In this document: positions 2,832 to 12,358 of the stretch, one piece after another
Layout: the number at the start of each line of letters is the position of its first letter
Numbering within the stretch: the stretch's first letter is position 1
IMG/VR virus record: IMGVR_UViG_3300036715_000626
Coordinates: 1 to 64,000 of that record
Reading direction: 5' to 3' (one strand)
DNA: 64,000 nucleotides
Translations under genes and position numbers: made by a program
The notes under the pieces: model-generated
Seen by the model: only the letters and a program-made list of their open reading frames with translations
What the model was told of the DNA's origin: nothing
Databases searched by the model: none

Positions 2832-5015
2832 TTAATGTTTTACAGGGTGAATCTTATCTTTATCATGCACATAGTCAATTTGAATACCAGATGCTTTAAA
2901 GATATTATCAACAATCTCAAGTGAACTATCATTCCCATACGGACACACCGATCTGTCAACAACTCTCTCTATGTTAGTAGGATGAGCTGCCGTTAAAACA
3001 TTGTGATAGATGTGTCTGTGTGTTTTAATAGAGTTACCTCTATCCTTAAGCTCGATCAGAGCTAACCGTGATGCATACGATACATATAATCGTGTTTCTG
3101 TTTCACTAAGTATTTTAACAGGGTTATTTCTAAACGGCATAAGATTACGCGCTTTGTTACTAACCCCAATTGGTAACCCGTAGTGATTGGTTTTAGCCGA
3201 CGACGTTGACAAATAGTTATCTGCTGTTTTAGCCAACAATATAAAATACATAGGAGCGATAAACATAGCATCCTTAGTAAGTTTAATACCATCTTCAGCG
3301 ATGTAAAGTAAACTACCCATCTCAGGTTCGTAGATAGTGCCTAACGAGTCTTTTACGATCTGATAAGGTTTCTTTTTACTACTTACCTTATAATAAAGAT
3401 AAAGCTCGTTATCGATAATGTCTTTTAATAAGTAGCGCATTGACTCTTGGTTATTAAGACATGCTTTGTAGGTATCATACTGTTCAGTTCCAATGATCTC
3501 TAATAACCCCAATACCAAATTAAAGCCAGTTAGAATATTTTCATCACTGTAAGCTTCGATTGGAGATATAGTACTACCATTGTGTCCATTTCTGATGAAA
3601 TGCTCGATAACCATTTTCTTAGTGTAACGTGACATTGAATTGAAGTATTGCTCATACAGACGTGCTACGTTCATACGAGAGGGGATCGAACTCGGATCCA
3701 TTATAATATCGGCTCGGTTACCCCATTGATCTACTGGCATCTGGTCGTTATCACGAACTTCAATAACAACACCTTTTGAACCTGATAAGTCAGTGATCTT
3801 AGCACCAGGTCCGATGGTTATAGTATATCTTATGGTAAATTCCAATCGTAAAATATCAAGTTGTTCGTTACGAAACGTATAACGAATTTTGTTATCATCA
3901 GGATTCACAACAGCATATGCATCCATTAGTAATCTATGGAACTTCTCACTTACGGCTAGATCGTTATTGTGATAACGACGGTAGTGATCTTTCTGTAGAT
4001 TTTCATAGGTCTCGATGATTGTTGCGTAGTAACGCTTTAATCCGTTAACGTACTTCATTACCGCATCAGAAGTGTTGGTATACACTTCTTTCTTAAAACG
4101 TGGACTGTGATATGCTTTAATATCAGTAACTACACCCGACTTAACCACATAACCATTTTCTAAAACATCCTTACCAGGTCCTTTTACATAAACTGCTTTA
4201 TCGAAAATTGGATTAAACTCTCTAACATCTTTACGAGATGTTAAAGCTGGTGATAGTTCTGGGTTATAATCGCGAAGAACCATAACTACCGAAGAATCAT
4301 TGATCTGCTCTCCGATTTCAGGAAACGGTTTATAAACAGTATCGTCTCCGTAGATGTTGAGCGGGAATGTATCAGATCCAAATTCGACAACTCTGGTTTC
4401 AAATAGTTCATAGGATAATCGTTCTGACATACTCTTACTGATAACAACGCCATCTTCAGATACTTCTGGAATAGTCATTAGCGCGATATTAGCGTTGATA
4501 CCAAACTTATATCCTTTATTCTTACCAACTGCAGGTGAGTCAGCAAGTATGGTACCAGCTTGAATAATGTCTCCATACATTAAGGAATCTAGTAACTCTG
4601 TATTCCATTTATATCTGAAACCAAAGTATTGATGTAGTGAAAAATGATATGGAACATCGATAATATCGATTTCCCCAGTAGCAATATCCTCCACTATAAT
4701 AAGTTGTGCAACTGTAGTTGTTACACTATTGGCTTCAACACCATCATATCTAGGTATGATTTTAAGTACGCGACAATCGTTTTCAGCTTTCTTAGAGAAC
4801 GTGTTATCTCCGAATTGATTATCGATACCAGTTTGAATAATGCGCTCTTCACCATTTTTCAATGTTAACGACTGTGACATATGCGATGATGACATATAAG
4901 AACGCGCTGAGCTATTGTTAGCTACGAATGGGTTAATACTGTGAATTGAAATAAGTTCTTCTCTAATTCGCAGATCGTCATCTACTGGGAATACTTCTTC
5001 TGTTGAGTTTAACAT
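2832..5015 (-). CDS. Non-virion RNA polymerase beta subunit, C-terminal part (phiKZ gp71-73-like)
   Basis: Beta motifs NPFVANNSSAR..M...HMSQ, GINANIA, SEDG, GAKITDLSGSKGVV, ADIIMDPSSIPSRMN; syntenic with gp68/69/70-like genes. Confidence 0.92.
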   Translation of the reverse strand: MLNSTEEVFPVDDDLRIREELISIHSINPFVANNSSARSYMSSSHMSQSLTLKNGEERIIQTGIDNQFGDNTFSKKAENDCRVLKIIPRYDGVEANSVTTTVAQLIIVEDIATGEIDIIDVPYHFSLHQYFGFRYKWNTELLDSLMYGDIIQAGTILADSPAVGKNKGYKFGINANIALMTIPEVSEDGVVISKSMSERLSYELFETRVVEFGSDTFPLNIYGDDTVYKPFPEIGEQINDSSVVMVLRDYNPELSPALTSRKDVREFNPIFDKAVYVKGPGKDVLENGYVVKSGVVTDIKAYHSPRFKKEVYTNTSDAVMKYVNGLKRYYATIIETYENLQKDHYRRYHNNDLAVSEKFHRLLMDAYAVVNPDDNKIRYTFRNEQLDILRLEFTIRYTITIGPGAKITDLSGSKGVVIEVRDNDQMPVDQWGNRADIIMDPSSIPSRMNVARLYEQYFNSMSRYTKKMVIEHFIRNGHNGSTISPIEAYSDENILTGFNLVLGLLEIIGTEQYDTYKACLNNQESMRYLLKDIIDNELYLYYKVSSKKKPYQIVKDSLGTIYEPEMGSLLYIAEDGIKLTKDAMFIAPMYFILLAKTADNYLSTSSAKTNHYGLPIGVSNKARNLMPFRNNPVKILSETETRLYVSYASRLALIELKDRGNSIKTHRHIYHNVLTAAHPTNIERVVDRSVCPYGNDSSLEIVDNIFKASGIQIDYVHDKDKIHPVKH

Positions 5016-5051
5016 GTTACCTCTTTTCTCTTTGATTTGTTATTACTATTT

Positions 5052-5066
5052 TAATAATATGTGGTT
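5052..5066 (-). promoter_or_regulatory. Putative early promoter (AACCACATATTATTA)
   Basis: Motif recurs upstream of several genes (11627, 13416, 21464, 53345, 62808); resembles the phiKZ early TATATTAC element. Confidence 0.55.
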
Positions 5067-5082
5067 AAACCCAGTTAGAATA

Positions 5083-5724
5083 TTAGTAACACATATCGAT
5101 AGATGATTTAATCTGTTCTAAATCTCTATCTGCTAACATATGGTTAAGGGAATATAAATCGTACTTACGGTTAAGTAACTTAAACAAATAAACTAAATAC
5201 TCGATAACATTTGGTTGTAGATTTTTAAGTGTTTTACAATAGATAACTTCACCTTTACGATCGGTTACCTCAGTATTACAAATATCTTCTACAATATATA
5301 CTCTAACGGTATCAGTTTCTAAACCATCGATACCAGTATCTAAGTAATAGGTAAACACATTGGTTTCCAGATTTGTTAATAATATGATCGTATTAATATA
5401 CCCATATATAAACGAATAATAGTTAACATTACCTTCTAATATCTTTTGTATGTTTGTATCTTCGATAGGTATCACAGTTAGTAATTCTGGATTAACATAT
5501 GAATTATCGAATAACTTATCAAAATTTTTACATAACATATGTTGTGGTGTTACACCCTTATTCATATCCATATTAAATATAGTTAGTTTAGTATCTAAGT
5601 ACTCGGGATCATCTTTCATTAGCCCGAATAATTTAATAGGTATATAGTGTACCGTAGAAATACCTGTAGTATAATCTAACTGTAATGGCTCGATATTTTT
5701 TGATCTTTTAGCACTCATATTCAT
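5083..5724 (-). CDS. Hypothetical protein
   Basis: 213-aa ORF with AAGGT RBS. Confidence 0.7.
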   Translation of the reverse strand: MNMSAKRSKNIEPLQLDYTTGISTVHYIPIKLFGLMKDDPEYLDTKLTIFNMDMNKGVTPQHMLCKNFDKLFDNSYVNPELLTVIPIEDTNIQKILEGNVNYYSFIYGYINTIILLTNLETNVFTYYLDTGIDGLETDTVRVYIVEDICNTEVTDRKGEVIYCKTLKNLQPNVIEYLVYLFKLLNRKYDLYSLNHMLADRDLEQIKSSIDMCY

Positions 5725-5807
5725 ACCTTTATACTATTAATGTTCTATACAAATCTGTTAGTTAAAAATATTATATAGTTGTTAATTGAACAACACAAGG
5801 AGATCAT

Positions 5808-6755
5808 GTGAGTACTAATATTTTAAAGAGAAGAGCCGCTCTTCTTTCGGTAATGTCAAATATGTTACTGGTAGTCGGTAAGATAACTATCGGTTTAGTA
5901 ATTGGGTCGGTGGGCGTATTGTCAGAAGGTATACATTCGTCTATCGATTTGATTGCGGCAGTCATAGCATTCTTTGCTATTAAACAAGCCAGTGTTCCAG
6001 CAGATAGTAATCATCGGTATGGACATGGTAAGATTGAAAACATATCTGGTGTCGTAGAAGGATTACTAATATTCGGTGCAGGGGTTTGGATTATTTACGA
6101 ATCTATCTCTAAATTTGTCCACCCCGGTAAAGTAGAATTTATTGGTTGGGGTATTGCAATTATGTCTGTGTCTTCTTTGGTAAATTTGTTTGTATCAAGA
6201 TACTTATATAAAATAGGTAACGAAACAGACTCTATCGCTTTAAAAGCAGATGCAGCTCATTTGAAAACGGATATCATTACTTCAGTAGGTGTAGCTATTG
6301 GGTTAGTAGGTGTGTACTTAACTGGTTACCAATGGATTGACCCGTTAGCAGCTATTATCGTAGCATGTATTATTATTTATACTTCTTATGAAATTATACA
6401 TGAAGCTATTGCTCCGCTATTGGATAGCAGCTTAGATAGTGCTACTGAAAATAAAATACTTAAAGTTATTGAGGAATTTAAAGGAGATTACTTATTTCAC
6501 CACAATCTTCGTACTAGAAAGTCTGGTAGTACTAAGTATATTGATTTTAGAATAACTCTTTGTAAGCATATGACTATGATTTACGTAGACCGGCTTACCT
6601 ACGCTATGACGTATAAACTACGTTTACATTACAATAATATAGATGCGTTAATACTTCCTGAAGCATGTAATAACGAATGTAATGGTTGTGACCGTGCATG
6701 TAAAGCCACCAAAGTAGAGGTAACTAACAATGACACCCTATGTGCAAACAAATAA
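5808..6755 (+). CDS. Cation diffusion facilitator (FieF/YiiP-like) divalent metal transporter
   Basis: Six hydrophobic helices; SEGIHSSID, PAD.NHRYGHGKIE, S.ALKADAAHLKTD, WIDPLAA, LRTRKSG; AAGGAG RBS. Confidence 0.95.
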   Translation: MSTNILKRRAALLSVMSNMLLVVGKITIGLVIGSVGVLSEGIHSSIDLIAAVIAFFAIKQASVPADSNHRYGHGKIENISGVVEGLLIFGAGVWIIYESISKFVHPGKVEFIGWGIAIMSVSSLVNLFVSRYLYKIGNETDSIALKADAAHLKTDIITSVGVAIGLVGVYLTGYQWIDPLAAIIVACIIIYTSYEIIHEAIAPLLDSSLDSATENKILKVIEEFKGDYLFHHNLRTRKSGSTKYIDFRITLCKHMTMIYVDRLTYAMTYKLRLHYNNIDALILPEACNNECNGCDRACKATKVEVTNNDTLCANK

Positions 6756-7071
6756 TCTATCTAGAACTATAAACACTGGATTTACATTAACCAGTGAAAT
6801 AGTTACTTACTGGGAAAGTATGATAGATGTTTTAAAAGCTAAGCATACTAACGGAACAAAAGAAATAACCCCAGTAATGGCTGAGAAGTACCAATTTGAT
6901 ATGTATGGATTATTCTTAGAATTAGGAATACCTCAATCTCATATCTACCCGCATATACGGGTAAATGGTTATGCTTCTAGTAACGATTACTACGGAGAGA
7001 AGTTACGAATACTGATTCTTGATCCATACATTCTGGAACAATACATATCTCTTTTTCTACAAAAAAAATAA
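6730..7071 (+). CDS. Conserved phiKZ-like small hypothetical protein
   Basis: AEKYQFDMYGLF..LGIP...YPHIRVNGY.SS.DY.G pattern recalled from phiKZ-like core genes near nvRNAP. Confidence 0.7.
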   Translation: MTPYVQTNNLSRTINTGFTLTSEIVTYWESMIDVLKAKHTNGTKEITPVMAEKYQFDMYGLFLELGIPQSHIYPHIRVNGYASSNDYYGEKLRILILDPYILEQYISLFLQKK

Positions 7072-7072
7072 T

Positions 7073-7104
7073 ACATACAGATACGCAGTTGCGTATCTGT
7101 ATGT
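7073..7104. terminator. Bidirectional hairpin between convergent genes
   Basis: ACATACAGATACGC-AGTT-GCGTATCTGTATGT. Confidence 0.75.
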
Positions 7105-7110
7105 TATTTA

Positions 7111-8508
7111 TCATCGATAACCATATCCGTTAGGGTTAATTGGTTGCATTTGCATCGGTTGAGGATAAACCGGTTGTTGATACATTTGTTGTGGATAGAT
7201 CGGTTGCTGTGGTTGTTGATACATATAGTTATTAGGTTGGCTGTTCACCATAGAACTAATACCTAGATTAACTGGTTGCTGATAGTTATTAACCATCATG
7301 TTTGGATTAGCATTATACTGCCCCATTTCATTCTTAGTAATAACATGTTGAACAGGAACACCGCCAAAACTACCATTACCATACAAGATCTTTTTAATAG
7401 GATCTTCGTCAAACTGCTGTTGTACTGGTTGGTACATCGTAGGTTGTACTGGTTGTTGGTATACCGGTTGTTGTACTGGTTGTTGATACAGTGTATTATC
7501 CTGTTGCTGAACTACTGGTAAATGACCAACACTTCTAGTCATAACACTATTGATGTCAGCTAACGGAATCTTCTTAGCCGCTTTTTGTCGCGTTAAATCG
7601 ATTTCATTAGGAATTGTTAACAGTTCCGATTTATAGACACCTAAGTTATTAAGTTCTTGATCGGTAACCGTAATATCGATAAACCCTGTGTCTGAGTATT
7701 CTTTATTAACGTAGTCCAGCTGTTTGATAACGCTCATTATTTTAGCAGCGGTATCTTTGTACAGTGTGAATAGTGATAAGAATCCTGGAGATTCTGAATC
7801 ATTAGAACCGTATGAGATAGTGCCATTTTCAATACCCGGAATGAGATATTCCAGCATGAGTTTGAAGATAGTAATATCTTTGTTACGAAGTTTAACTCCG
7901 TAGATAGGAGTTTCGTTATCAACCGTTAACAACTCATCGTATAGATTACACGCCATAGTAGCTAATCGATTATACTTAACACCATCTTTTACACCTGATT
8001 TTTTAAGGAAGATAGTTACAAATCCCTTATCAGATTTTAACGATGCTGCAAACATATTCTGCCAAAGCTCGATAGATCGATCATCTACAAACTTTTTGAT
8101 ACCAGGATTAGCTGCTTTGTTAAGAGACGCCAAGAATTCATTAATCTCGATCGATGTTTTCTTTTGGAGTTCTTTATTCGAAGCTAACGATAGTAGCAAG
8201 GCACCAGCTGACAATAGTGCATAACTCAAACGCACTTCAGCAACTGTTTTAGTACGTTTAAGACTGAGTGTATCGCCTTTGATAACATTCTCGTTCAAAG
8301 GATTGTATGGAATCTTGGTGATGATCAACTCGCCGTCATCATCTTTACTAAAAATAGTATTGATGTGATCATGTGTAGGTAGAACAAGCGGTTTACCATC
8401 CTCAGTAACCAAAATACCTGTAGGTTCCCCGGATGTTTTGATAAAATTATCTTCGGTAACAAAAAGCCCTAAACTAGCTAGAACCTTTTTATAGAATTCG
8501 TTTAACAT
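7111..8508 (-). CDS. phiKZ gp70-like core protein with Gln/Pro/Tyr-rich C-terminal tail
   Basis: FYKKVLASLGL, GKPLVLPT, YNPLNEN, YGSNDSESPGF motifs; position between gp69-like and beta-C genes. Confidence 0.7.
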   Translation of the reverse strand: MLNEFYKKVLASLGLFVTEDNFIKTSGEPTGILVTEDGKPLVLPTHDHINTIFSKDDDGELIITKIPYNPLNENVIKGDTLSLKRTKTVAEVRLSYALLSAGALLLSLASNKELQKKTSIEINEFLASLNKAANPGIKKFVDDRSIELWQNMFAASLKSDKGFVTIFLKKSGVKDGVKYNRLATMACNLYDELLTVDNETPIYGVKLRNKDITIFKLMLEYLIPGIENGTISYGSNDSESPGFLSLFTLYKDTAAKIMSVIKQLDYVNKEYSDTGFIDITVTDQELNNLGVYKSELLTIPNEIDLTRQKAAKKIPLADINSVMTRSVGHLPVVQQQDNTLYQQPVQQPVYQQPVQPTMYQPVQQQFDEDPIKKILYGNGSFGGVPVQHVITKNEMGQYNANPNMMVNNYQQPVNLGISSMVNSQPNNYMYQQPQQPIYPQQMYQQPVYPQPMQMQPINPNGYGYR

Positions 8509-8516
8509 TGTTTTCC

Positions 8517-9959
8517 TTAATAGTGAGGTGTCGTGGATTGATTATAGGTTGCTTCTATAATATTTGCAAAGTCGTTGATTATCCCATTCTTATTGAGGTT
8601 ATCAGTAATAACAGGTACATACAAACTATCTGCGAAGGTAGGGAACCGGAATGGAATCATTGTGTTATAATTAACACTTACCGCAATACTAGTATCACCC
8701 AGTACATTAGCCGAGATATGCACTTCTACTTGTAACATGTTACCCTTAGTGATCTCAGGTAGTAGAATATTTTTGATTCTTGATACTGCTTTATTTACGT
8801 AAGCTTGAATATCAATACCTTCGATAAATGATTTAGCATCAGTTACTACTACAAGAGGTTGTCCTGATGTATTAGACATCGATAATGACATTACCGATAA
8901 CAAACACTCTGACATAATACTCGTCATCGTTTGCGATACTGTTGTTGAAATCATCGTTTCGATAGTTGGCTGCATCATAGGTGCGGTATGTTCCGTATCT
9001 AAGATTGTAGAGAAATTCTGCAAACCGATATCGTTAACATTGTCAAACATGGTAGTGTGTGTACTGAGACCTGGGTCGAGTATCTTTAACGTTGCTAATG
9101 TAAATGATGTTGGTGTAAACATACCTGTTATCGCGTACAACGAATAGATAAACGGCATATGCATAAGCGATTGCTCACTAAGTGCATAACCAGCAGTTTC
9201 ACAAATACCTGCAGTATCTTCGATTCTACCAGCGTTAGATCGTGCTTCCAAGAATGAATTCAAGGTCTTCGTAAAATATGTCATAGGATCGTTATTCATA
9301 CGATCTGATGTATTACTTTTACCATTGATACTTCCGGTGGTGTTAACTACGTTAGTATTGTTATCCCCGTGGAGTTCCAACGTACCGATCGTTTCAATAA
9401 CATCTTTCGGTCGAATAAGTTTAAGATCGCCAATAGATTCAACTTCTTCATATCGATTACCTCCAGCAAGATCTGTTACCACATTAAACGTACTATGCGG
9501 CGTAACATGCCAGTAACCGAAAGCATCCATAGTTCGTACTACGTTAGTAATACTATTGATGTAGAACATCATATTAGGATCTACGAAACCGGATATACTT
9601 GGATCATGATATTCTGAAAACCCTTGTATATAACTAACCATGATAGATCCACCTTGACCACCAAATGCTGATTCAACTTCTAACAAAAACCGAAGTCTTT
9701 GAGTACCCCACCCATTAGGAATAGTTGCCATGCCTACTGGCGATGAGCTTATCCCAATAATGTCCGGCATTGTATTCGAAAAATCCCAGTTATTGATAGG
9801 TGTGTTTCTCATAGCACCGCGTGTGTCGAAGTATGCTTCCAATCTCGATAAATCGTTATGGGTTCCTCTGACACTAAATGGTCTTTGATATACATCTTGA
9901 TAACTATTACGTGTAGCTATCAAAAGTAACTTATTAATTTTTATACCTGAATTGTTCAT
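8517..9959 (-). CDS. phiKZ gp69-like protein (PicA/Imp1, phage-nucleus protein import factor)
   Basis: YQDVYQRPF, IPNGWGTQRLRFLLEVE, LIRPKDV, PTFADSLY.PV; lies immediately downstream of the gp68-like gene. Confidence 0.65.
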   Translation of the reverse strand: MNNSGIKINKLLLIATRNSYQDVYQRPFSVRGTHNDLSRLEAYFDTRGAMRNTPINNWDFSNTMPDIIGISSSPVGMATIPNGWGTQRLRFLLEVESAFGGQGGSIMVSYIQGFSEYHDPSISGFVDPNMMFYINSITNVVRTMDAFGYWHVTPHSTFNVVTDLAGGNRYEEVESIGDLKLIRPKDVIETIGTLELHGDNNTNVVNTTGSINGKSNTSDRMNNDPMTYFTKTLNSFLEARSNAGRIEDTAGICETAGYALSEQSLMHMPFIYSLYAITGMFTPTSFTLATLKILDPGLSTHTTMFDNVNDIGLQNFSTILDTEHTAPMMQPTIETMISTTVSQTMTSIMSECLLSVMSLSMSNTSGQPLVVVTDAKSFIEGIDIQAYVNKAVSRIKNILLPEITKGNMLQVEVHISANVLGDTSIAVSVNYNTMIPFRFPTFADSLYVPVITDNLNKNGIINDFANIIEATYNQSTTPHY

Positions 9960-11557
9960 GCTATTCTTAACCTTTCGTGTTGAATAATAAATTCTGCAAG
10001 CTGTATCTTAAGATCGGAAGGAAGTATCTTGTTGATATTTTTATCTTCCCCTAGAACTTCAATAACGTAATTGTCGTAAGCCGTTGGTATCCAACGTTTT
10101 CCGAATAAATCATTTGTCATTTCGTTAATAGATTCTTCCACAAGATTAGCAGATGTTTCAGCATTAACAACTCTATTGTAAGGGAAGTAATAACCTAAAT
10201 CATCTTTAATGGTTTGTGATAGTCTAGAACGATTGACAGTAATGTTGATGTAATGAGCATTACTGCTAGAATTATCAACATACGCCGTTAATAACAAAGC
10301 CAGGTTCTTGTAACCCATACCCCATAAATAAATAAACCCTATTGATAATAGGTTAATGATACCTTCAATACGAATATAAGCCAATCCTCTTGGATCGATA
10401 ATATCCTTAAAGATAATTGCTAATAGGTTTATCTGTTGCTGGTGTATGTTACCCGTAAAGAAGTATCTACAGAATGCTAGTGCATCTATTAAAACCATAT
10501 TCGATACTGTTACTCTGCCTTGCATATCGATATCAAGAGAGATAGGCATTTGTGCCAATACCATATGTATATTAGAAACACTCCAGTCCATCTCTACCTC
10601 ATGACCAGGAGCAAGACTACTTGTCATACGATAACTTTCTAGAACCGATTCTTTATCACCCTCACCAGAGTCAGGATCTGATAAAACTGTCTTATCGCGT
10701 ATAGATTTTGAAACATCTCCGTTGTTACGAAGTTTGTTATTAATAAAGTTATACACCCGTGTGATTATGTTTTTTTCTTCATTATCATTAACGAGTGTAG
10801 CGATACTTATCTTTTGTATTACTACAATAGCCAAAATATACATAGACATTTCACTTTTAGGAATCTGTCTTTCGATAATACGGATAGCATCAGCTTCGTT
10901 ATCATTCGTAGGTGCCACTACTAACTTCTCTACCCAACCAAATAGTTTTAACATAGCTGGTGTCGCGAATAGTCTGTGTGAAGAGATAAAGTAGAATAAC
11001 AAATACTCTTTATGTGGACCAGAGAAATCTTTTTGCTTAACATACGCAAATTGACCTAATGGACCCATGACACTTTTAATAATAACCGCGAGTGCTGCGA
11101 ACTCTAGGTAATCATCTTTAAGATAGGTTTGTACTCGTGAACCTCTACCATCCTGTTCGATCAGCATATCGAACTCTTCTTTCAAATTGTTCGGAACTTT
11201 AAGACGATAGATATGCTTAATGTAATTAAACACATCTTCAATATCGAACATATCCAATATCGGATGAGCGATTTCGTATGGAAGAGGAGTTAGATCTTTA
11301 CGAGGAATACTGTTAACGATAGCATCATCAGCTTCTACATAAAGTTTAAAGAGTTCTTTCTTAAAGTCTTCACCTTTATAATCCACATAACTGTTCAATA
11401 ACATGAACTGGTGGTCTGGGTCTAACTCATCTTTGTTACGTTTGCTGATGATGCTACTAATAACAAATTCTACTACGTTACCACCATACTCTACAGCTAC
11501 AGTGATATCGCCGCGACTGCTAACGTTTAACAATCGATACATTTCGGTTCTTACCAT
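9956..11557 (-). CDS. Non-virion RNAP promoter-specificity subunit (phiKZ gp68-like)
   Basis: GSRVQTYLKDDYLE, DKESVLESYR, YFPY motifs, size and synteny. Start moved to ATG 11557 (AGGAG RBS). Confidence 0.75.
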   Translation of the reverse strand: MVRTEMYRLLNVSSRGDITVAVEYGGNVVEFVISSIISKRNKDELDPDHQFMLLNSYVDYKGEDFKKELFKLYVEADDAIVNSIPRKDLTPLPYEIAHPILDMFDIEDVFNYIKHIYRLKVPNNLKEEFDMLIEQDGRGSRVQTYLKDDYLEFAALAVIIKSVMGPLGQFAYVKQKDFSGPHKEYLLFYFISSHRLFATPAMLKLFGWVEKLVVAPTNDNEADAIRIIERQIPKSEMSMYILAIVVIQKISIATLVNDNEEKNIITRVYNFINNKLRNNGDVSKSIRDKTVLSDPDSGEGDKESVLESYRMTSSLAPGHEVEMDWSVSNIHMVLAQMPISLDIDMQGRVTVSNMVLIDALAFCRYFFTGNIHQQQINLLAIIFKDIIDPRGLAYIRIEGIINLLSIGFIYLWGMGYKNLALLLTAYVDNSSSNAHYINITVNRSRLSQTIKDDLGYYFPYNRVVNAETSANLVEESINEMTNDLFGKRWIPTAYDNYVIEVLGEDKNINKILPSDLKIQLAEFIIQHERLRIA

Positions 11558-11626
11558 TTCTTCTCCTGGTAATGATTTGCGCAAATCATCTTTTTGTGTT
11601 AATATACCATAACACCATGGTTATAT

Positions 11627-11640
11627 TAATAATATGTGGG
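11627..11640 (-). promoter_or_regulatory. Putative early promoter (CCCACATATTATTA)
   Basis: Near-identical to the 5052 motif; upstream of the gp68-like gene. Confidence 0.55.
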
Positions 11641-11656
11641 TAAAAAAATATAGACA

Positions 11657-11677
11657 TAGTACCAGAAACTGGTACTA
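11657..11677. terminator. Hairpin, 9-bp stem
   Basis: TAGTACCAG-AAA-CTGGTACTA overlapping the stop of 11675..12358, with a T-tract further along the minus strand. Confidence 0.6.
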
Positions 11678-12358
11678 CAGCAATTCTTCAATTGAACTAG
11701 TAAAGTCTATGTTAGAGGCGTTACTAGTAGATGGTGGTGTAGTTTGACGAGCCGTTGCTACCGGAACCGGTGTATTTTGTTTCACCATATCTGTATAAGC
11801 TTCTTTGGACATGATAGATTTTAAAAGATCCAAGTAACTTTTAGCATAAAGTGTGCTGAGGATACGTTTATCGGTGATAATGTTATTTAAATCATCGTAA
11901 AACACGAACCATTTATCCGATGGCATTAAATAGAACTTAAGTTTACGTTTACCCTCTTCAATCGCAGCGATAAAGATAACGCCTTCTTTATCACGACCAA
12001 CGTGTACTTTAGCCTGTAGGTAGATGGTATTAGTTTTAACACCATTTTCAAACTTAACGTTATTACAATCGATACTGTATTTGATTTCGTCTTTACTCGC
12101 GATTACTTTCTCAATCCGATCCATAAGGATACCGAATGTAACGTAGTCAAATGGAGCTGTGATGAATGTATCATAATTGAACTTAGCATTGGGTTGTCTA
12201 TTACCATTAGAGGTATAAACATTGATACGTGGATAACCCGCACGAATACTCCATGCTAGTAAACCATAATCATCTTTGTCGTTGTTGTCCTTGTAATCTT
12301 TACGTAGACTCAGTGGTGTAAGTTTAATAAACTTAACTGCGGGTTTTTGATCTGCCAT
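11675..12358 (-). CDS. phiKZ gp67-like core protein
   Basis: LAWSIRAGYPRINVYT, VGRDKEGVIFI; synteny. Confidence 0.65.
   Translation of the reverse strand: MADQKPAVKFIKLTPLSLRKDYKDNNDKDDYGLLAWSIRAGYPRINVYTSNGNRQPNAKFNYDTFITAPFDYVTFGILMDRIEKVIASKDEIKYSIDCNNVKFENGVKTNTIYLQAKVHVGRDKEGVIFIAAIEEGKRKLKFYLMPSDKWFVFYDDLNNIITDKRILSTLYAKSYLDLLKSIMSKEAYTDMVKQNTPVPVATARQTTPPSTSNASNIDFTSSIEELL

What the first reader, a model, noticed from the sequence alone, without database searches (positions are those of the whole stretch)
5808..6755. Host-type CDF metal transporter in the nvRNAP/PicA core block, with a degenerate regulatory site
Seen: transport site A looks intact (TM2 H-x3-D in GIHSSID, TM5 H-x3-D in AHLKTD), as does the loop motif HRYGHGK. 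The cytoplasmic domain reads YIDFRITL...YVDRL...ALILPEA where YiiP/MamM-type proteins typically have D-x-H, AH and IHxEP, so the site-C histidines seem lost. A Cys-rich tail (CNNECNGCDRAC) remains. Inference: a phage-adapted, possibly deregulated Zn/Fe/Co exporter that alters host metal pools, for example against metal-dependent defences or metal stress. It overlaps a core gene and may be co-transcribed with it.
Basis: partly seen in the sequence, partly recalled or inferred. Interest (0 to 1): 0.65.

Follow-up and report, generated by a model that had tools for sequence, protein, structure and literature searches.

The report
Jumbo-phage metal exporter lacking cytoplasmic zinc site
A giant nucleus-forming-type phage from microbial mats carries a metal-efflux transporter taken from its likely Campylobacterota hosts, which keeps its transport site under selection but has lost the metal-binding histidines of its cytoplasmic domain; it is a new variant of a well-known transporter family.

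Summary
Window 5808-6755(+) encodes a 315-aa cation diffusion facilitator (CDF): Pfam Cation_efflux 1e-51 plus ZT_dimer, a YiiP-like fold, six TM helices and an alpha-beta-beta-alpha-beta cytoplasmic domain (CTD). Transport site A (H43, D47, H151, D155) and loop site B (D66, H69, H73) are intact, as in all 120 best homologs. In site C, three of five YiiP ligands are replaced (H248R, H261D, H283L; H232 and E285 kept). Those positions are His in 113-116 of the 120.

One other copy exists (P0003, 59% identical), on an independent contig with the same gene order. It has also lost the three His (K, A, Q). The two form a 100/100 clade inside the Campylobacterota-type clade. Relatives with 51-57% identical RNAP beta have no CDF. 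The gene is not decaying: dN/dS is about 0.2, the base composition matches the phage, a strain variant is intact, and the 5' block and Cys4 tail are conserved. The CTD evolves faster than in cellular controls.

The most likely reading is a working exporter with a metal-independent CTD dimer. "Deregulated" and "anti-defence" are untested. Viral CDFs are already catalogued (phrog_7308, czcD AMGs), so interest is moderate.

The parts
5808..6755 (+). CDF transporter gene, 315 aa. TM helices at about 3-32, 35-61, 74-104, 112-140, 143-172 and 177-204. The CTD spans 211-286 (alpha-beta-beta-alpha-beta). The Cys4 tail spans 287-298.
   Evidence: Pfam, NCBIfam and PHROG hits. YiiP by sequence at 3.9e-35 and by fold with TM-score up to 0.82. 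AF2 model with pLDDT 79.6.
5934..5948 (+). Codons for H43-D47, the TM2 half of transport site A
   Evidence: Aligned to soYiiP D47/D51. Invariant in all 120 homologs.
6258..6272 (+). Codons for H151-D155, the TM5 half of transport site A
   Evidence: Aligned to soYiiP H155/D159. Invariant in all 120 homologs.
6003..6026 (+). Codons for D66-H73, the TM2-TM3 loop site B (D66, H69, H73)
   Evidence: Aligned to soYiiP D70/H73/H77. Invariant in all 120 homologs.
6501..6665 (+). Codons for residues 232-286, holding the degenerate site C. H232 and E285 are kept. R248, D261 and L283 replace His, and A286 replaces Pro.
   Evidence: Site table over 120 homologs. E. coli YiiP ligands are H232, H248, H283, H261' and D285 (PMC6465983).
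6666..6701 (+). Cys-rich tail C287-x3-C291-x2-C294-x3-C298
   Evidence: All four Cys are identical in P0003. They are present in 72-85 of the 120 homologs.
5765..5807 (+). Conserved 5' block with an imperfect 17-bp palindrome (GTTGTTAATTGAACAAC) and the AAGGAG ribosome-binding site
   Evidence: Near-identical in L002. Unique in the window and in the genome.
6730..7071 (+). Overlapping downstream gene, a conserved small chimallivirus protein of 113 aa (phrog_3455)
   Evidence: PHROG hit 9.5e-11. Homologs lie at the same place in RP12 and in L012 (4e-23). The overlap is also present in L002.
7073..7104 (.). Terminator-like hairpin with a 14-bp stem that closes the CDF-p113 unit
   Evidence: 4 terminator-like sites found against 0.6 expected.
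2832..5015 (-). Context: RNAP beta-subunit gene, a phiKZ gp71-type (non-virion RNAP) homolog
   Evidence: PF00562 and phrog_3295 at 5.7e-170. Homologs in 315 phage records.
8517..9959 (-). Context: PicA homolog (PhiPA3 gp63 / phiKZ gp69 type)
   Evidence: BLASTP 2e-22 to PhiPA3 gp063. PicA is defined as phiKZ gp69 and PhiPA3 gp63 in PMC11087766.

Best explanation
The gene encodes a functional inner-membrane divalent-metal/proton antiporter of the CDF family. Its site-A quartet is HD-HD, so the substrate is most likely Zn2+; Fe2+, Co2+ or Cd2+ are not excluded.

The gene was captured once from a Campylobacterota-type bacterium by the common ancestor of two related chimallivirus-like jumbo phages of microbial mats. 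It was inserted into the divergent intergenic region between the nvRNAP-beta side and a small conserved gene, and it is now probably co-transcribed with that gene.

In the phage lineage the transmembrane machinery (site A, loop site B) stayed under purifying selection. The binuclear metal site at the CTD dimer interface was lost, and the CTD then evolved faster. The CTD keeps its fold. I infer that it still dimerises without metal, for example through an L283-L283' hydrophobic contact and charged residues at 248 and 261/262. The pump would then assemble and work independently of the cytoplasmic metal that normally fills site C.

Inferred role: to keep exporting metal from an infected cell whose own gene expression is taken over, in metal- and sulfide-rich mats.

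Shown: family, fold, site conservation and loss, single origin, selection, and gene context. Inferred: transport activity, substrate, metal-independent dimerisation, and physiological benefit.
For: Family and fold.

Sites: A and B are invariant and site C has lost 3 of its 5 ligands. Among the 120 best homologs, only the two phage copies lack all three His.

Origin:
- The phage pair is monophyletic (100/100) inside a 29-row clade (100/97) whose named members are Aliarcobacter, Sulfurovaceae and Campylobacterales.
- L002 has the same gene order.
- The related phages G002 and G003 have no CDF. In L012 the p113 homolog directly faces the RNAP side.

Selection:
- NG86 dN/dS is 0.23 overall, 0.16 for the TMD and 0.24 for the CTD, with dS near saturation so these are upper bounds.
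- GC3 matches each phage's own genome: 0.27 in the window, 0.14 in L002.
- A strain contig from run X1 spans the whole gene with 3 synonymous and 3 conservative changes and no indel.
- The 5' block is conserved and the four tail Cys are conserved.

CTD acceleration: against the clade, the phage copies show TMD identity 0.62-0.64 but CTD identity 0.33-0.39. Cellular subclades at TMD 0.65 keep CTD 0.60. Root-to-tip length is 1.45-1.71 for the phage copies and 0.66-1.03 for the cellular ones.

Dimer: the homodimer model scores ipSAE 0.58 against a best control of 0.00. That mark was reached by 21 of 30 solved homo-pairs and 0 of 23 single chains. The three runs agree in at least 98% of their contacts and the partner's pLDDT is at least 76. 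The interface includes 281-287 with an L283-L283' contact.

Literature: YiiP site C is a 33 nM site that stabilises the dimer. Isolated CTDs dimerise without metal, and ZnT7 has no CTD zinc (PMC10617992).
Against: - No transport, binding or expression data exist. None of the runs that hold the sequence is recorded as RNA.
- dS is saturated, so dN/dS is rough. The strain comparison has only six changes.
- The replacements at the lost positions differ between the two phages (R/K, D/A, L/Q). That fits plain relaxation as well as compensation.
- In soYiiP a double mutation of site C weakened CTD interactions, so lower activity is possible.
- The dimer pass may reflect the model's memory of solved CDF dimers (caveat).
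- HMM scores are far below every equivalog cut-off, so the substrate is a guess based on the HD-HD quartet (PMC8341793).
Confidence: 0.6

Rival explanations
1. Dominant-negative or modulating subunit. The phage protein is about 55% identical to host-type CDFs. It could heterodimerise with the host's own CDF. With its metal-free CTD, it would then lock or poison the heterodimer and raise cytoplasmic metal for phage metalloenzymes instead of lowering it.
For: Site C lies at the CTD dimer interface and has changed in the phage copies. The CTD is the fastest-evolving part of the protein. CDFs work as dimers (PMC10617992).
Against: All seven ligands of sites A and B are invariant, and the TMD has the lowest dN/dS of the three parts (0.16). 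A mere poison subunit would not need that. The close ortholog is present in only 4 of 151 sampled genomes of the donor order, so a partner may often be missing.
Confidence: 0.1
2. Passenger gene under relaxed selection. It is a captured host gene of little use to the phage, and the loss of site C is the first step of decay.
For: The lineage has long branches. Its identity between the two phages (59%) is lower than for RNAP beta (83%) and p113 (70%). The replacements at the lost positions are non-identical. Only two carriers are known.
Against: The ORFs are intact in two lineages whose synonymous sites are saturated. dN/dS is about 0.2. Base composition is fully matched to each phage. The upstream block and the Cys4 tail are conserved. 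The CTD fold is predicted with confidence. The strain variant has no disruptive change.
Confidence: 0.12
3. The regulatory or structural metal site has moved rather than been lost. In this clade the adjacent CxxxCxxCxxxC tail would be the main cytoplasmic metal site, so the His site became dispensable and regulation is intact.
For: The tail follows directly after the HxEP motif. It is kept in both phages within an otherwise 36%-identical stretch and is present in 72-85 of the 120 homologs. Site B is also intact.
Against: Cellular members of the clade keep both the tail and the His site, so the tail alone does not make the His site dispensable in cells. The tail has low model confidence, with pLDDT 56 and lower from residue 291 on. 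No function of such a tail is documented in what I read.
Confidence: 0.15
4. Assembly artefact or host contamination: the CDF is bacterial DNA joined by mistake to a phage contig.
For: The nearest homologs are cellular. Cellular CDF contigs from the same samples match a short stretch of the gene.
Against: An independent assembly (L002, from another sample) has the same gene order on both sides. X1 contig 7 spans 4907-7094 across both junctions. GC3 equals that of the phage neighbours. The record has direct terminal repeats.
Confidence: 0.01

Closest known systems
YiiP/FieF (E. coli, Shewanella oneidensis), the structural model of prokaryotic CDF Zn2+/H+ antiporters
   Same: Same fold (TM-score up to 0.82) and the best solved-structure match by sequence (3.9e-35). 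Site A is at the same positions. Site B (D, H, H) is identical in kind. The CTD has the same alpha-beta-beta-alpha-beta layout. The predicted homodimer has a CTD and loop interface.
   Different: Site A is HD-HD, not DD-HD. Site C has lost H248, H261 and H283 (E. coli numbering, which happens to match the phage numbering). The phage protein has an extra Cys4 tail. Its FieF equivalog score is 169 bits against a cut-off of 420, so it is not a FieF ortholog.
Cys-tailed CDFs of Campylobacterota (P0004-P0044; for example the MAG proteins from Aliarcobacter sp., Sulfurovaceae L014 and Campylobacterales L015)
   Same: They are the closest relatives at 50-58% identity and share one clade with the phage copies (100/97). 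They have the same HD-HD site A, the same site B and the same CxxxCxxCxxxC tail.
   Different: All keep DFH, AH and IHxEP. Their CTDs evolve at the same pace as their TMDs. They are chromosomal.
Virus-borne CDFs already catalogued: phrog_7308 'cation efflux protein' (moron/AMG class), czcD vAMGs in sediment viromes, and IMG/VR loci L003-L007
   Same: The phage protein hits phrog_7308 at 1e-50. czcD is listed as a viral AMG (bioRxiv 10.1101/2024.04.28.591573).
   Different: They are only 37-39% identical to the phage protein. L003-L007 keep H261, H283, E285 and P286. L008 matches at 45% identity, but its reading frame did not align over site C and its position 151 is S, so nothing can be said about its site C. 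I checked none of these loci for a chimallivirus core block. Many 'phage' records with CDF hits look like bacterial contigs.
MamM / CzrB type CDFs, where CTD metal binding is described as regulatory
   Same: They share the CTD fold and the positions of the metal ligands. MamM/MamB HMM scores are 135 bits against a cut-off of 350.
   Different: In those proteins the CTD binds metal and changes conformation (PMC7441159). The phage CTD lacks most of the ligands. The phage protein is not an equivalog of either.
ZnT7 (human), a CDF with no zinc seen in its CTD
   Same: It is a precedent for a working CDF whose CTD dimer does not rely on bound metal (cited in PMC10617992). Its site A is HD-HD, the ZnT type.
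   Different: It is a eukaryotic protein with 14-15% identity, it has a His-rich loop, and the loss arose independently.

Membership tests
Cation diffusion facilitator (CDF) superfamily | Cation_efflux transmembrane domain above Pfam's gathering score, and TIGR01297 above its cut-off | tested here: met
   PF01545 scores 175.8 bits against 26.6. TIGR01297 scores 217 bits against 82.35.
Cation diffusion facilitator (CDF) superfamily | Six TM helices followed by a cytoplasmic alpha-beta-beta-alpha-beta domain (ZT_dimer) | tested here: met
   The AF2 secondary structure shows both. PF16916 scores 30.5 bits against 26.7, which is marginal. Foldseek to YiiP 3h90 gives TMt 0.82 over 283 columns.
Cation diffusion facilitator (CDF) superfamily | Four-residue transport site A on TM2 and TM5 | tested here: met
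   H43, D47, H151 and D155 align to the YiiP site A and are invariant in 120 homologs.
Cation diffusion facilitator (CDF) superfamily | Homodimer | tested here: met
   This is a model only. ipSAE is 0.58 against a best control of 0.00. The mark was reached by 21 of 30 solved homo-pairs and 0 of 23 single chains. The runs agree in at least 98% of contacts and the partner's pLDDT is at least 76. The pass may come from the model's memory of solved CDF dimers.
Cation diffusion facilitator (CDF) superfamily | Metal/proton antiport activity | not testable with these tools
   It needs complementation or proteoliposome assays.
YiiP/FieF-type CDF with three metal sites | Loop site B (Asp plus two His between TM2 and TM3) | tested here: met
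   D66, H69 and H73 align to soYiiP D70, H73 and H77.
YiiP/FieF-type CDF with three metal sites | Binuclear CTD site C (H232, H248, H283, H261' and bridging D285) | tested here: not met
   Only H232 and E285 remain; positions 248, 261 and 283 are R, D and L. The ligand list is from PMC6465983.
YiiP/FieF-type CDF with three metal sites | NCBIfam FieF equivalog score | tested here: not met
   NF050169 scores 169 bits against 420, and NF007064 scores 144 against 447.
MntE manganese exporter (NF052621) | Equivalog score | tested here: not met
   The score is 189 bits against a cut-off of 500. Site A is HD-HD.
Phage auxiliary (moron/AMG) cation efflux proteins, phrog_7308 | Match to the PHROG profile, and location in a bona fide phage genome | tested here: met
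   The phrog_7308 hit is 1e-50 over 283 of 302 profile positions. The record is a 205-kb virus record with terminal repeats. The gene is flanked by RNAP beta and PicA homologs.
Chimalliviridae-type jumbo phage (context of the gene) | PicA homolog and the split multisubunit RNAP block in conserved order | tested here: met
   The 480-aa protein matches PhiPA3 gp063 at 2e-22. The block order is the same as in PhiPA3 and RP12. picA is core to ChmA-encoding phages (PMC11087766). I did not search for chimallin itself.

The most novel reading that the evidence does not exclude
The two phages carry a naturally re-engineered CDF. Its cytoplasmic dimer interface no longer needs bound metal; a leucine pair and charged side chains stand in for the binuclear zinc site. 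The pump is therefore assembled and active whatever the host's metal status. A nucleus-forming-type phage would use it to reset the metal pool of the infected Campylobacterota cell. That would be the first phage-encoded metal transporter with a demonstrated role in infection, and a natural experiment on the disputed role of CDF site C (structural or regulatory).
Probability: 0.25. Interest if true: 0.6.

Novelty: new variant of a known kind. Interest (0 to 1): 0.4.

Why it matters
CDF transporters are a textbook family, and virus-borne copies are already listed as auxiliary genes. A phage CDF is therefore not new in itself.

Three things are new here:
- The gene sits in the conserved nvRNAP/PicA block of a chimallivirus-like jumbo phage that probably infects Campylobacterota. 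No cultured chimallivirus in the phage collection is close to it; RNAP beta identity is at most 33%.
- It shows a clean lineage-specific pattern. All seven ligands of the transport and loop sites are frozen, while three of the five ligands of the CTD site are gone in both carriers, with faster CTD evolution and continued purifying selection.
- That pattern bears on an open argument in the CDF field, namely whether the CTD metal site is a permanent structural clamp or a regulatory sensor. Nature has removed the site from a protein that selection still keeps. Comparing this protein with its 55%-identical cellular ortholog, which keeps the site, would be a simple way to test what site C contributes.

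For phage biology, it would be a test case for metal homeostasis as a target of host takeover.

Tried and rejected
- Megablast of window 3000-12000 against 50,697 phage records found no match. tblastn of the CDF found only distant hits (at most 45% identity), many on records that look like bacterial contigs.
- Searches for more carriers:
  - the RNAP-beta profile against JGI metagenome contigs gave one partial 3.2-kb contig without the locus;
  - P0003 and the 213-aa neighbour against IMG/VR gave nothing;
  - a CTD-only word search of 5.8 billion proteins returned only the window's own protein.
- I did not use the large profile search (search of protein representatives).
- YN00 dN/dS failed with a math domain error from saturation, so only NG86 values are given.
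- The conserved upstream block was tested as a recurring phage promoter and as an RNA hairpin. It is unique in the genome, absent from cellular CDF loci, and folds no better than shuffled sequence (z-scores 0.16 and -0.41).
- The sigma-70-type promoter scan was not above chance: 13 found against 13.9 expected.
- Cluster look-up for organism names of clade members gave no names.
- Literature searches for a characterised phage CDF found none: zero papers for 'cation diffusion facilitator' + phage + 'auxiliary metabolic', and only survey listings of czcD.
- I rejected equivalence to MntE, FieF, MamM/MamB, ZitB and DmeF because every score is far below its cut-off.
No genetic code other than table 11 was used.
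Full report
**1. What is there**

Window 5808-6755(+) is an open frame of 315 codons. It starts at GTG, five bases after AAGGAG. The public gene call (P0002, 300 aa) starts at the ATG at 5853. The 15 extra residues align with the closest relative P0003 and with the cellular homologs, so I take GTG 5808 as the start.

The protein matches Pfam Cation_efflux (1.1e-51) and ZT_dimer (3.6e-07, just above the gathering score). It also matches TIGR01297 'CDF' (217 bits against a cut-off of 82) and phrog_7308 'cation efflux protein' (1e-50). It falls far short of every NCBIfam equivalog cut-off: MntE 189 of 500, FieF 169 of 420, MamB/MamM 135 of 350, ZitB 83 of 408.

The best solved relatives are Shewanella and E. 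coli YiiP, at 3.9e-35 and 8e-30. An AlphaFold2 model built on 32 sequences (mean pLDDT 79.6) has six long helices and then helix-strand-strand-helix-strand. It superposes on YiiP with TM-score up to 0.82.

**2.

In the HMMER alignment to S. oneidensis YiiP, H43 and D47 fall on D47 and D51. H151 and D155 fall on H155 and D159. D66, H69 and H73 fall on D70, H73 and H77. Site A and loop site B are therefore complete.

In a MAFFT alignment of the 120 best database hits, these seven positions are invariant.

E. coli YiiP site C is built from His232, His248 and His283 of one protomer and His261 of the other, bridged by Asp285 (PMC6465983). The phage numbering happens to coincide with the E. coli numbering. 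H232 and E285 are kept. Position 248 is R (H in 113 of 120), position 261 is D (H in 116 of 120) and position 283 is L (H in 116 of 120). The following Pro286 (106 of 120) is A.

The pairwise alignment to soYiiP puts R262 rather than D261 opposite the His. The gap-free alignment with the close homologs puts D261 there. Neither residue is His.

The tail C287-x3-C291-x2-C294-x3-C298 is present, but 72-85 of the 120 homologs have it too.

**3.

They do not.

P0004-P0044 (50-58% identical) read ...DFH......AH... and ...IHHEPC.... The named members are MAGs of Aliarcobacter sp., Sulfurovaceae and Campylobacterales.

A word search restricted to residues 206-315 found no protein other than the window's own among 5.8 billion. 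No donor with a phage-like CTD is on record.

Other IMG/VR contigs with CDFs (L003-L007, 37-39% identical) keep H261, H283, E285 and P286.

**4. A second carrier and the origin**

The top hit P0003 (313 aa, 59% identical) lies on a 5.3-kb contig binned into a MAG (L002). The gene order is the same: a 727-aa RNAP beta, a 212-aa protein, then the CDF on the other strand, then an overlapping 112-aa gene.

Between the window and L002, identity is 83% for RNAP beta, 70% for the small gene, 59% for the CDF and 48% for the 213-aa protein.

P0003 has also lost the three His, with different residues (K248, A261 with D262, Q283), and it shares A286.

In a careful IQ-TREE analysis (LG+C20+F+G4, 54 rows) the two phage proteins are sisters (100/100). 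They sit in a 29-row clade (100/97) with the Campylobacterota-type proteins. Their position within that clade is not resolved.

Two related IMG/VR phages have no CDF anywhere: G002 (222 kb, RNAP beta 57% identical) and G003 (206 kb, 51%). In L012 the homolog of the small gene (4e-23) directly faces the RNAP side.

The CDF is therefore a single insertion into a divergent intergenic region, upstream of a conserved small gene. It occurred in the ancestor of the two carriers.

The block itself is the chimallivirus gp68-gp69-gp70-(small gene)-gp71 block. It has the same order in PhiPA3 and RP12. The 480-aa neighbour matches PhiPA3 gp063 (2e-22), which is the PicA homolog (PMC11087766). That phiKZ gp71 belongs to the non-virion RNAP is my own knowledge.

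The close ortholog of the CDF was found in only 4 of 151 sampled genomes of the order that holds the Sulfurovaceae MAG. The rest have paralogs of at most 37% identity.

**5. Is it decaying?**

No. The evidence is as follows.
- Between the two phage genes, NG86 gives dN 0.31 and dS 1.39 (ratio 0.23). The TMD gives 0.16, the CTD 0.24 and the 28-codon tail 0.59. For comparison, RNAP beta gives 0.07, p113 0.09 and p213 0.42. dS is near saturation, so these ratios are upper bounds.
- GC3 of each copy equals that of its own phage (0.27 and 0.14).
- The sequence is present in two microbial-mat metagenomes and, in part, in one sediment metagenome. A contig of run X1 spans 4907-7094 with three synonymous and three conservative changes in the CDF (I5T, V63I, A280V) and no indel. 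This contig also rules out a chimeric assembly.
- About 40 nt upstream of the start are almost identical in the two phages.

**6. The CTD is the part that changed**

Against the 41 clade members, the phage proteins have TMD identity 0.62-0.64 but CTD identity only 0.33-0.39. The two cellular subclades at TMD 0.65 keep CTD 0.60. Between the two phages, TMD identity is 0.70 and CTD identity 0.40. Cellular pairs with TMD 0.70-0.75 have a mean CTD identity of 0.61, with a 5th percentile of 0.40.

Root-to-tip length within the clade is 1.45 and 1.71 for the phage copies, against 0.66-1.03 for the cellular ones.

Constraint on the CTD was therefore relaxed or redirected after the loss of the metal site, while the membrane domain stayed as constrained as in cells.

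**7. How it most likely works**

In S. oneidensis YiiP, site C binds Zn at 33 nM and is expected to stay occupied and hold the dimer together. Removing it (D287A/H263A) weakens the CTD contacts, but without Fab the mutant still runs as a native dimer. Isolated CTDs dimerise without metal, and ZnT7 has no CTD zinc. Loop site B, not site C, is proposed to drive the global conformational change (PMC10617992). In the MamM school the CTD is called regulatory (PMC7441159).

The phage protein keeps site B, so the word 'deregulated' is not justified.

A homodimer model passes the tool's mark. ipSAE is 0.58 against a best control of 0.00. That mark was reached by 21 of 30 solved homo-pairs and 0 of 23 single chains. 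The runs agree in at least 98% of their contacts and pLDDT is at least 76. The interface includes 234-261, 281-287 and the 65-79 loop, and the best-defined contact is L283-L283'. This shows likeness to known CDF dimers, not binding.

My reading, as inference: this is a working HD-HD exporter whose CTD dimer is held by side-chain contacts in place of zinc. HD-HD is the quartet of the Zn-selective ZnTs, whereas YiiP is DD-HD (PMC8341793). The protein would be made from a two-gene transcript ended by the hairpin at 7073-7104 and inserted into the host inner membrane.

The benefit to the phage is not shown. Possibilities are continued metal efflux in a cell under takeover, in metal- and sulfide-rich mats, or another manipulation of metal pools.

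**8. Rivals**

I considered a poison subunit for host CDFs, a passenger gene in early decay, a shift of the cytoplasmic metal site to the Cys4 tail, and an assembly artefact. Each is weighed in its own section of this report. The artefact is excluded.

**9. Novelty**

Viral CDFs are already catalogued: phrog_7308 and czcD as a viral AMG in sediment viromes. I found no functional study of one.

The lineage-specific loss of site C, with sites A and B frozen, in a chimallivirus-like phage of probable Campylobacterota hosts, is a new variant of a known kind. It is of moderate interest, mainly as a natural experiment for the CDF field.

**10. Limits**

- Only two carriers are known.
- Synonymous sites are saturated.
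- There are no expression data.
- The host is inferred from the donor clade, base composition and habitat only.
- I did not search for chimallin.

Noticed in passing
window 5765-5807 (and L002 3915-3958): A block of about 40 nt just upstream of the CDF start is almost identical in the two phages, although their synonymous sites are saturated. It holds an imperfect 17-bp palindrome (GTTGTTAATTGAACAAC) followed by AAGGAG. It is unique in the 205-kb genome, absent from cellular CDF loci, and folds no better than shuffled sequence as an RNA hairpin. It may be an operator or a promoter.
   Followed up: partly
window 7073-7104: A perfect 14-bp-stem hairpin with T-runs on both strands lies between the convergent p113 gene and the gp70-like gene. 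It looks like a bidirectional terminator.
   Followed up: no
window 7111-8508 (-): The gp70-like 465-aa protein (phrog_3520) ends in Q/P/Y-rich short repeats (YQQPVQQPV...). The strain in run X1 carries a 15-nt in-frame insertion behind 7168, so the repeat number varies in the population.
   Followed up: no
L012 7989-10642: In the related CDF-less phage (IMGVR_UViG_3300028549_000365) the RNAP beta homolog is split into two ORFs of 399 and 304 aa, with a 104-aa ORF on the opposite strand in the gap. The PhiPA3 homolog is likewise annotated as fragments. This may be an intron or a homing element.
   Followed up: no
window 5904-6097: Read and contig depth spikes here in all three runs. Contigs of other organisms from the same mat and sediment samples match the HRYGHGK-coding stretch at 80% identity or more and then run on into unlike sequence, which suggests cellular CDF genes. 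Their identity was not checked.
   Followed up: partly
window 5808 vs 5853: The public gene call for this protein (300 aa) starts 15 codons too late. The GTG start with its AAGGAG site restores an N-terminus that is conserved in P0003 and in the cellular homologs.
   Followed up: yes
window 3117-3694: Contigs in runs X1 and X2 show a joint that skips 576 nt inside the RNAP beta gene, with only 22 matching letters on the shorter side and high depth. It is probably another organism's conserved RNAP stretch, not a deletion variant.
   Followed up: no
genomes G004, G051, G082, G136 (order of the Sulfurovaceae MAG): The Cys-tailed CDF ortholog (50-55% identical to the phage protein) was found in only 4 of 151 sampled genomes of the order. 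The others have paralogs of at most 37% identity. The candidate donor and host range is therefore narrow.
   Followed up: partly
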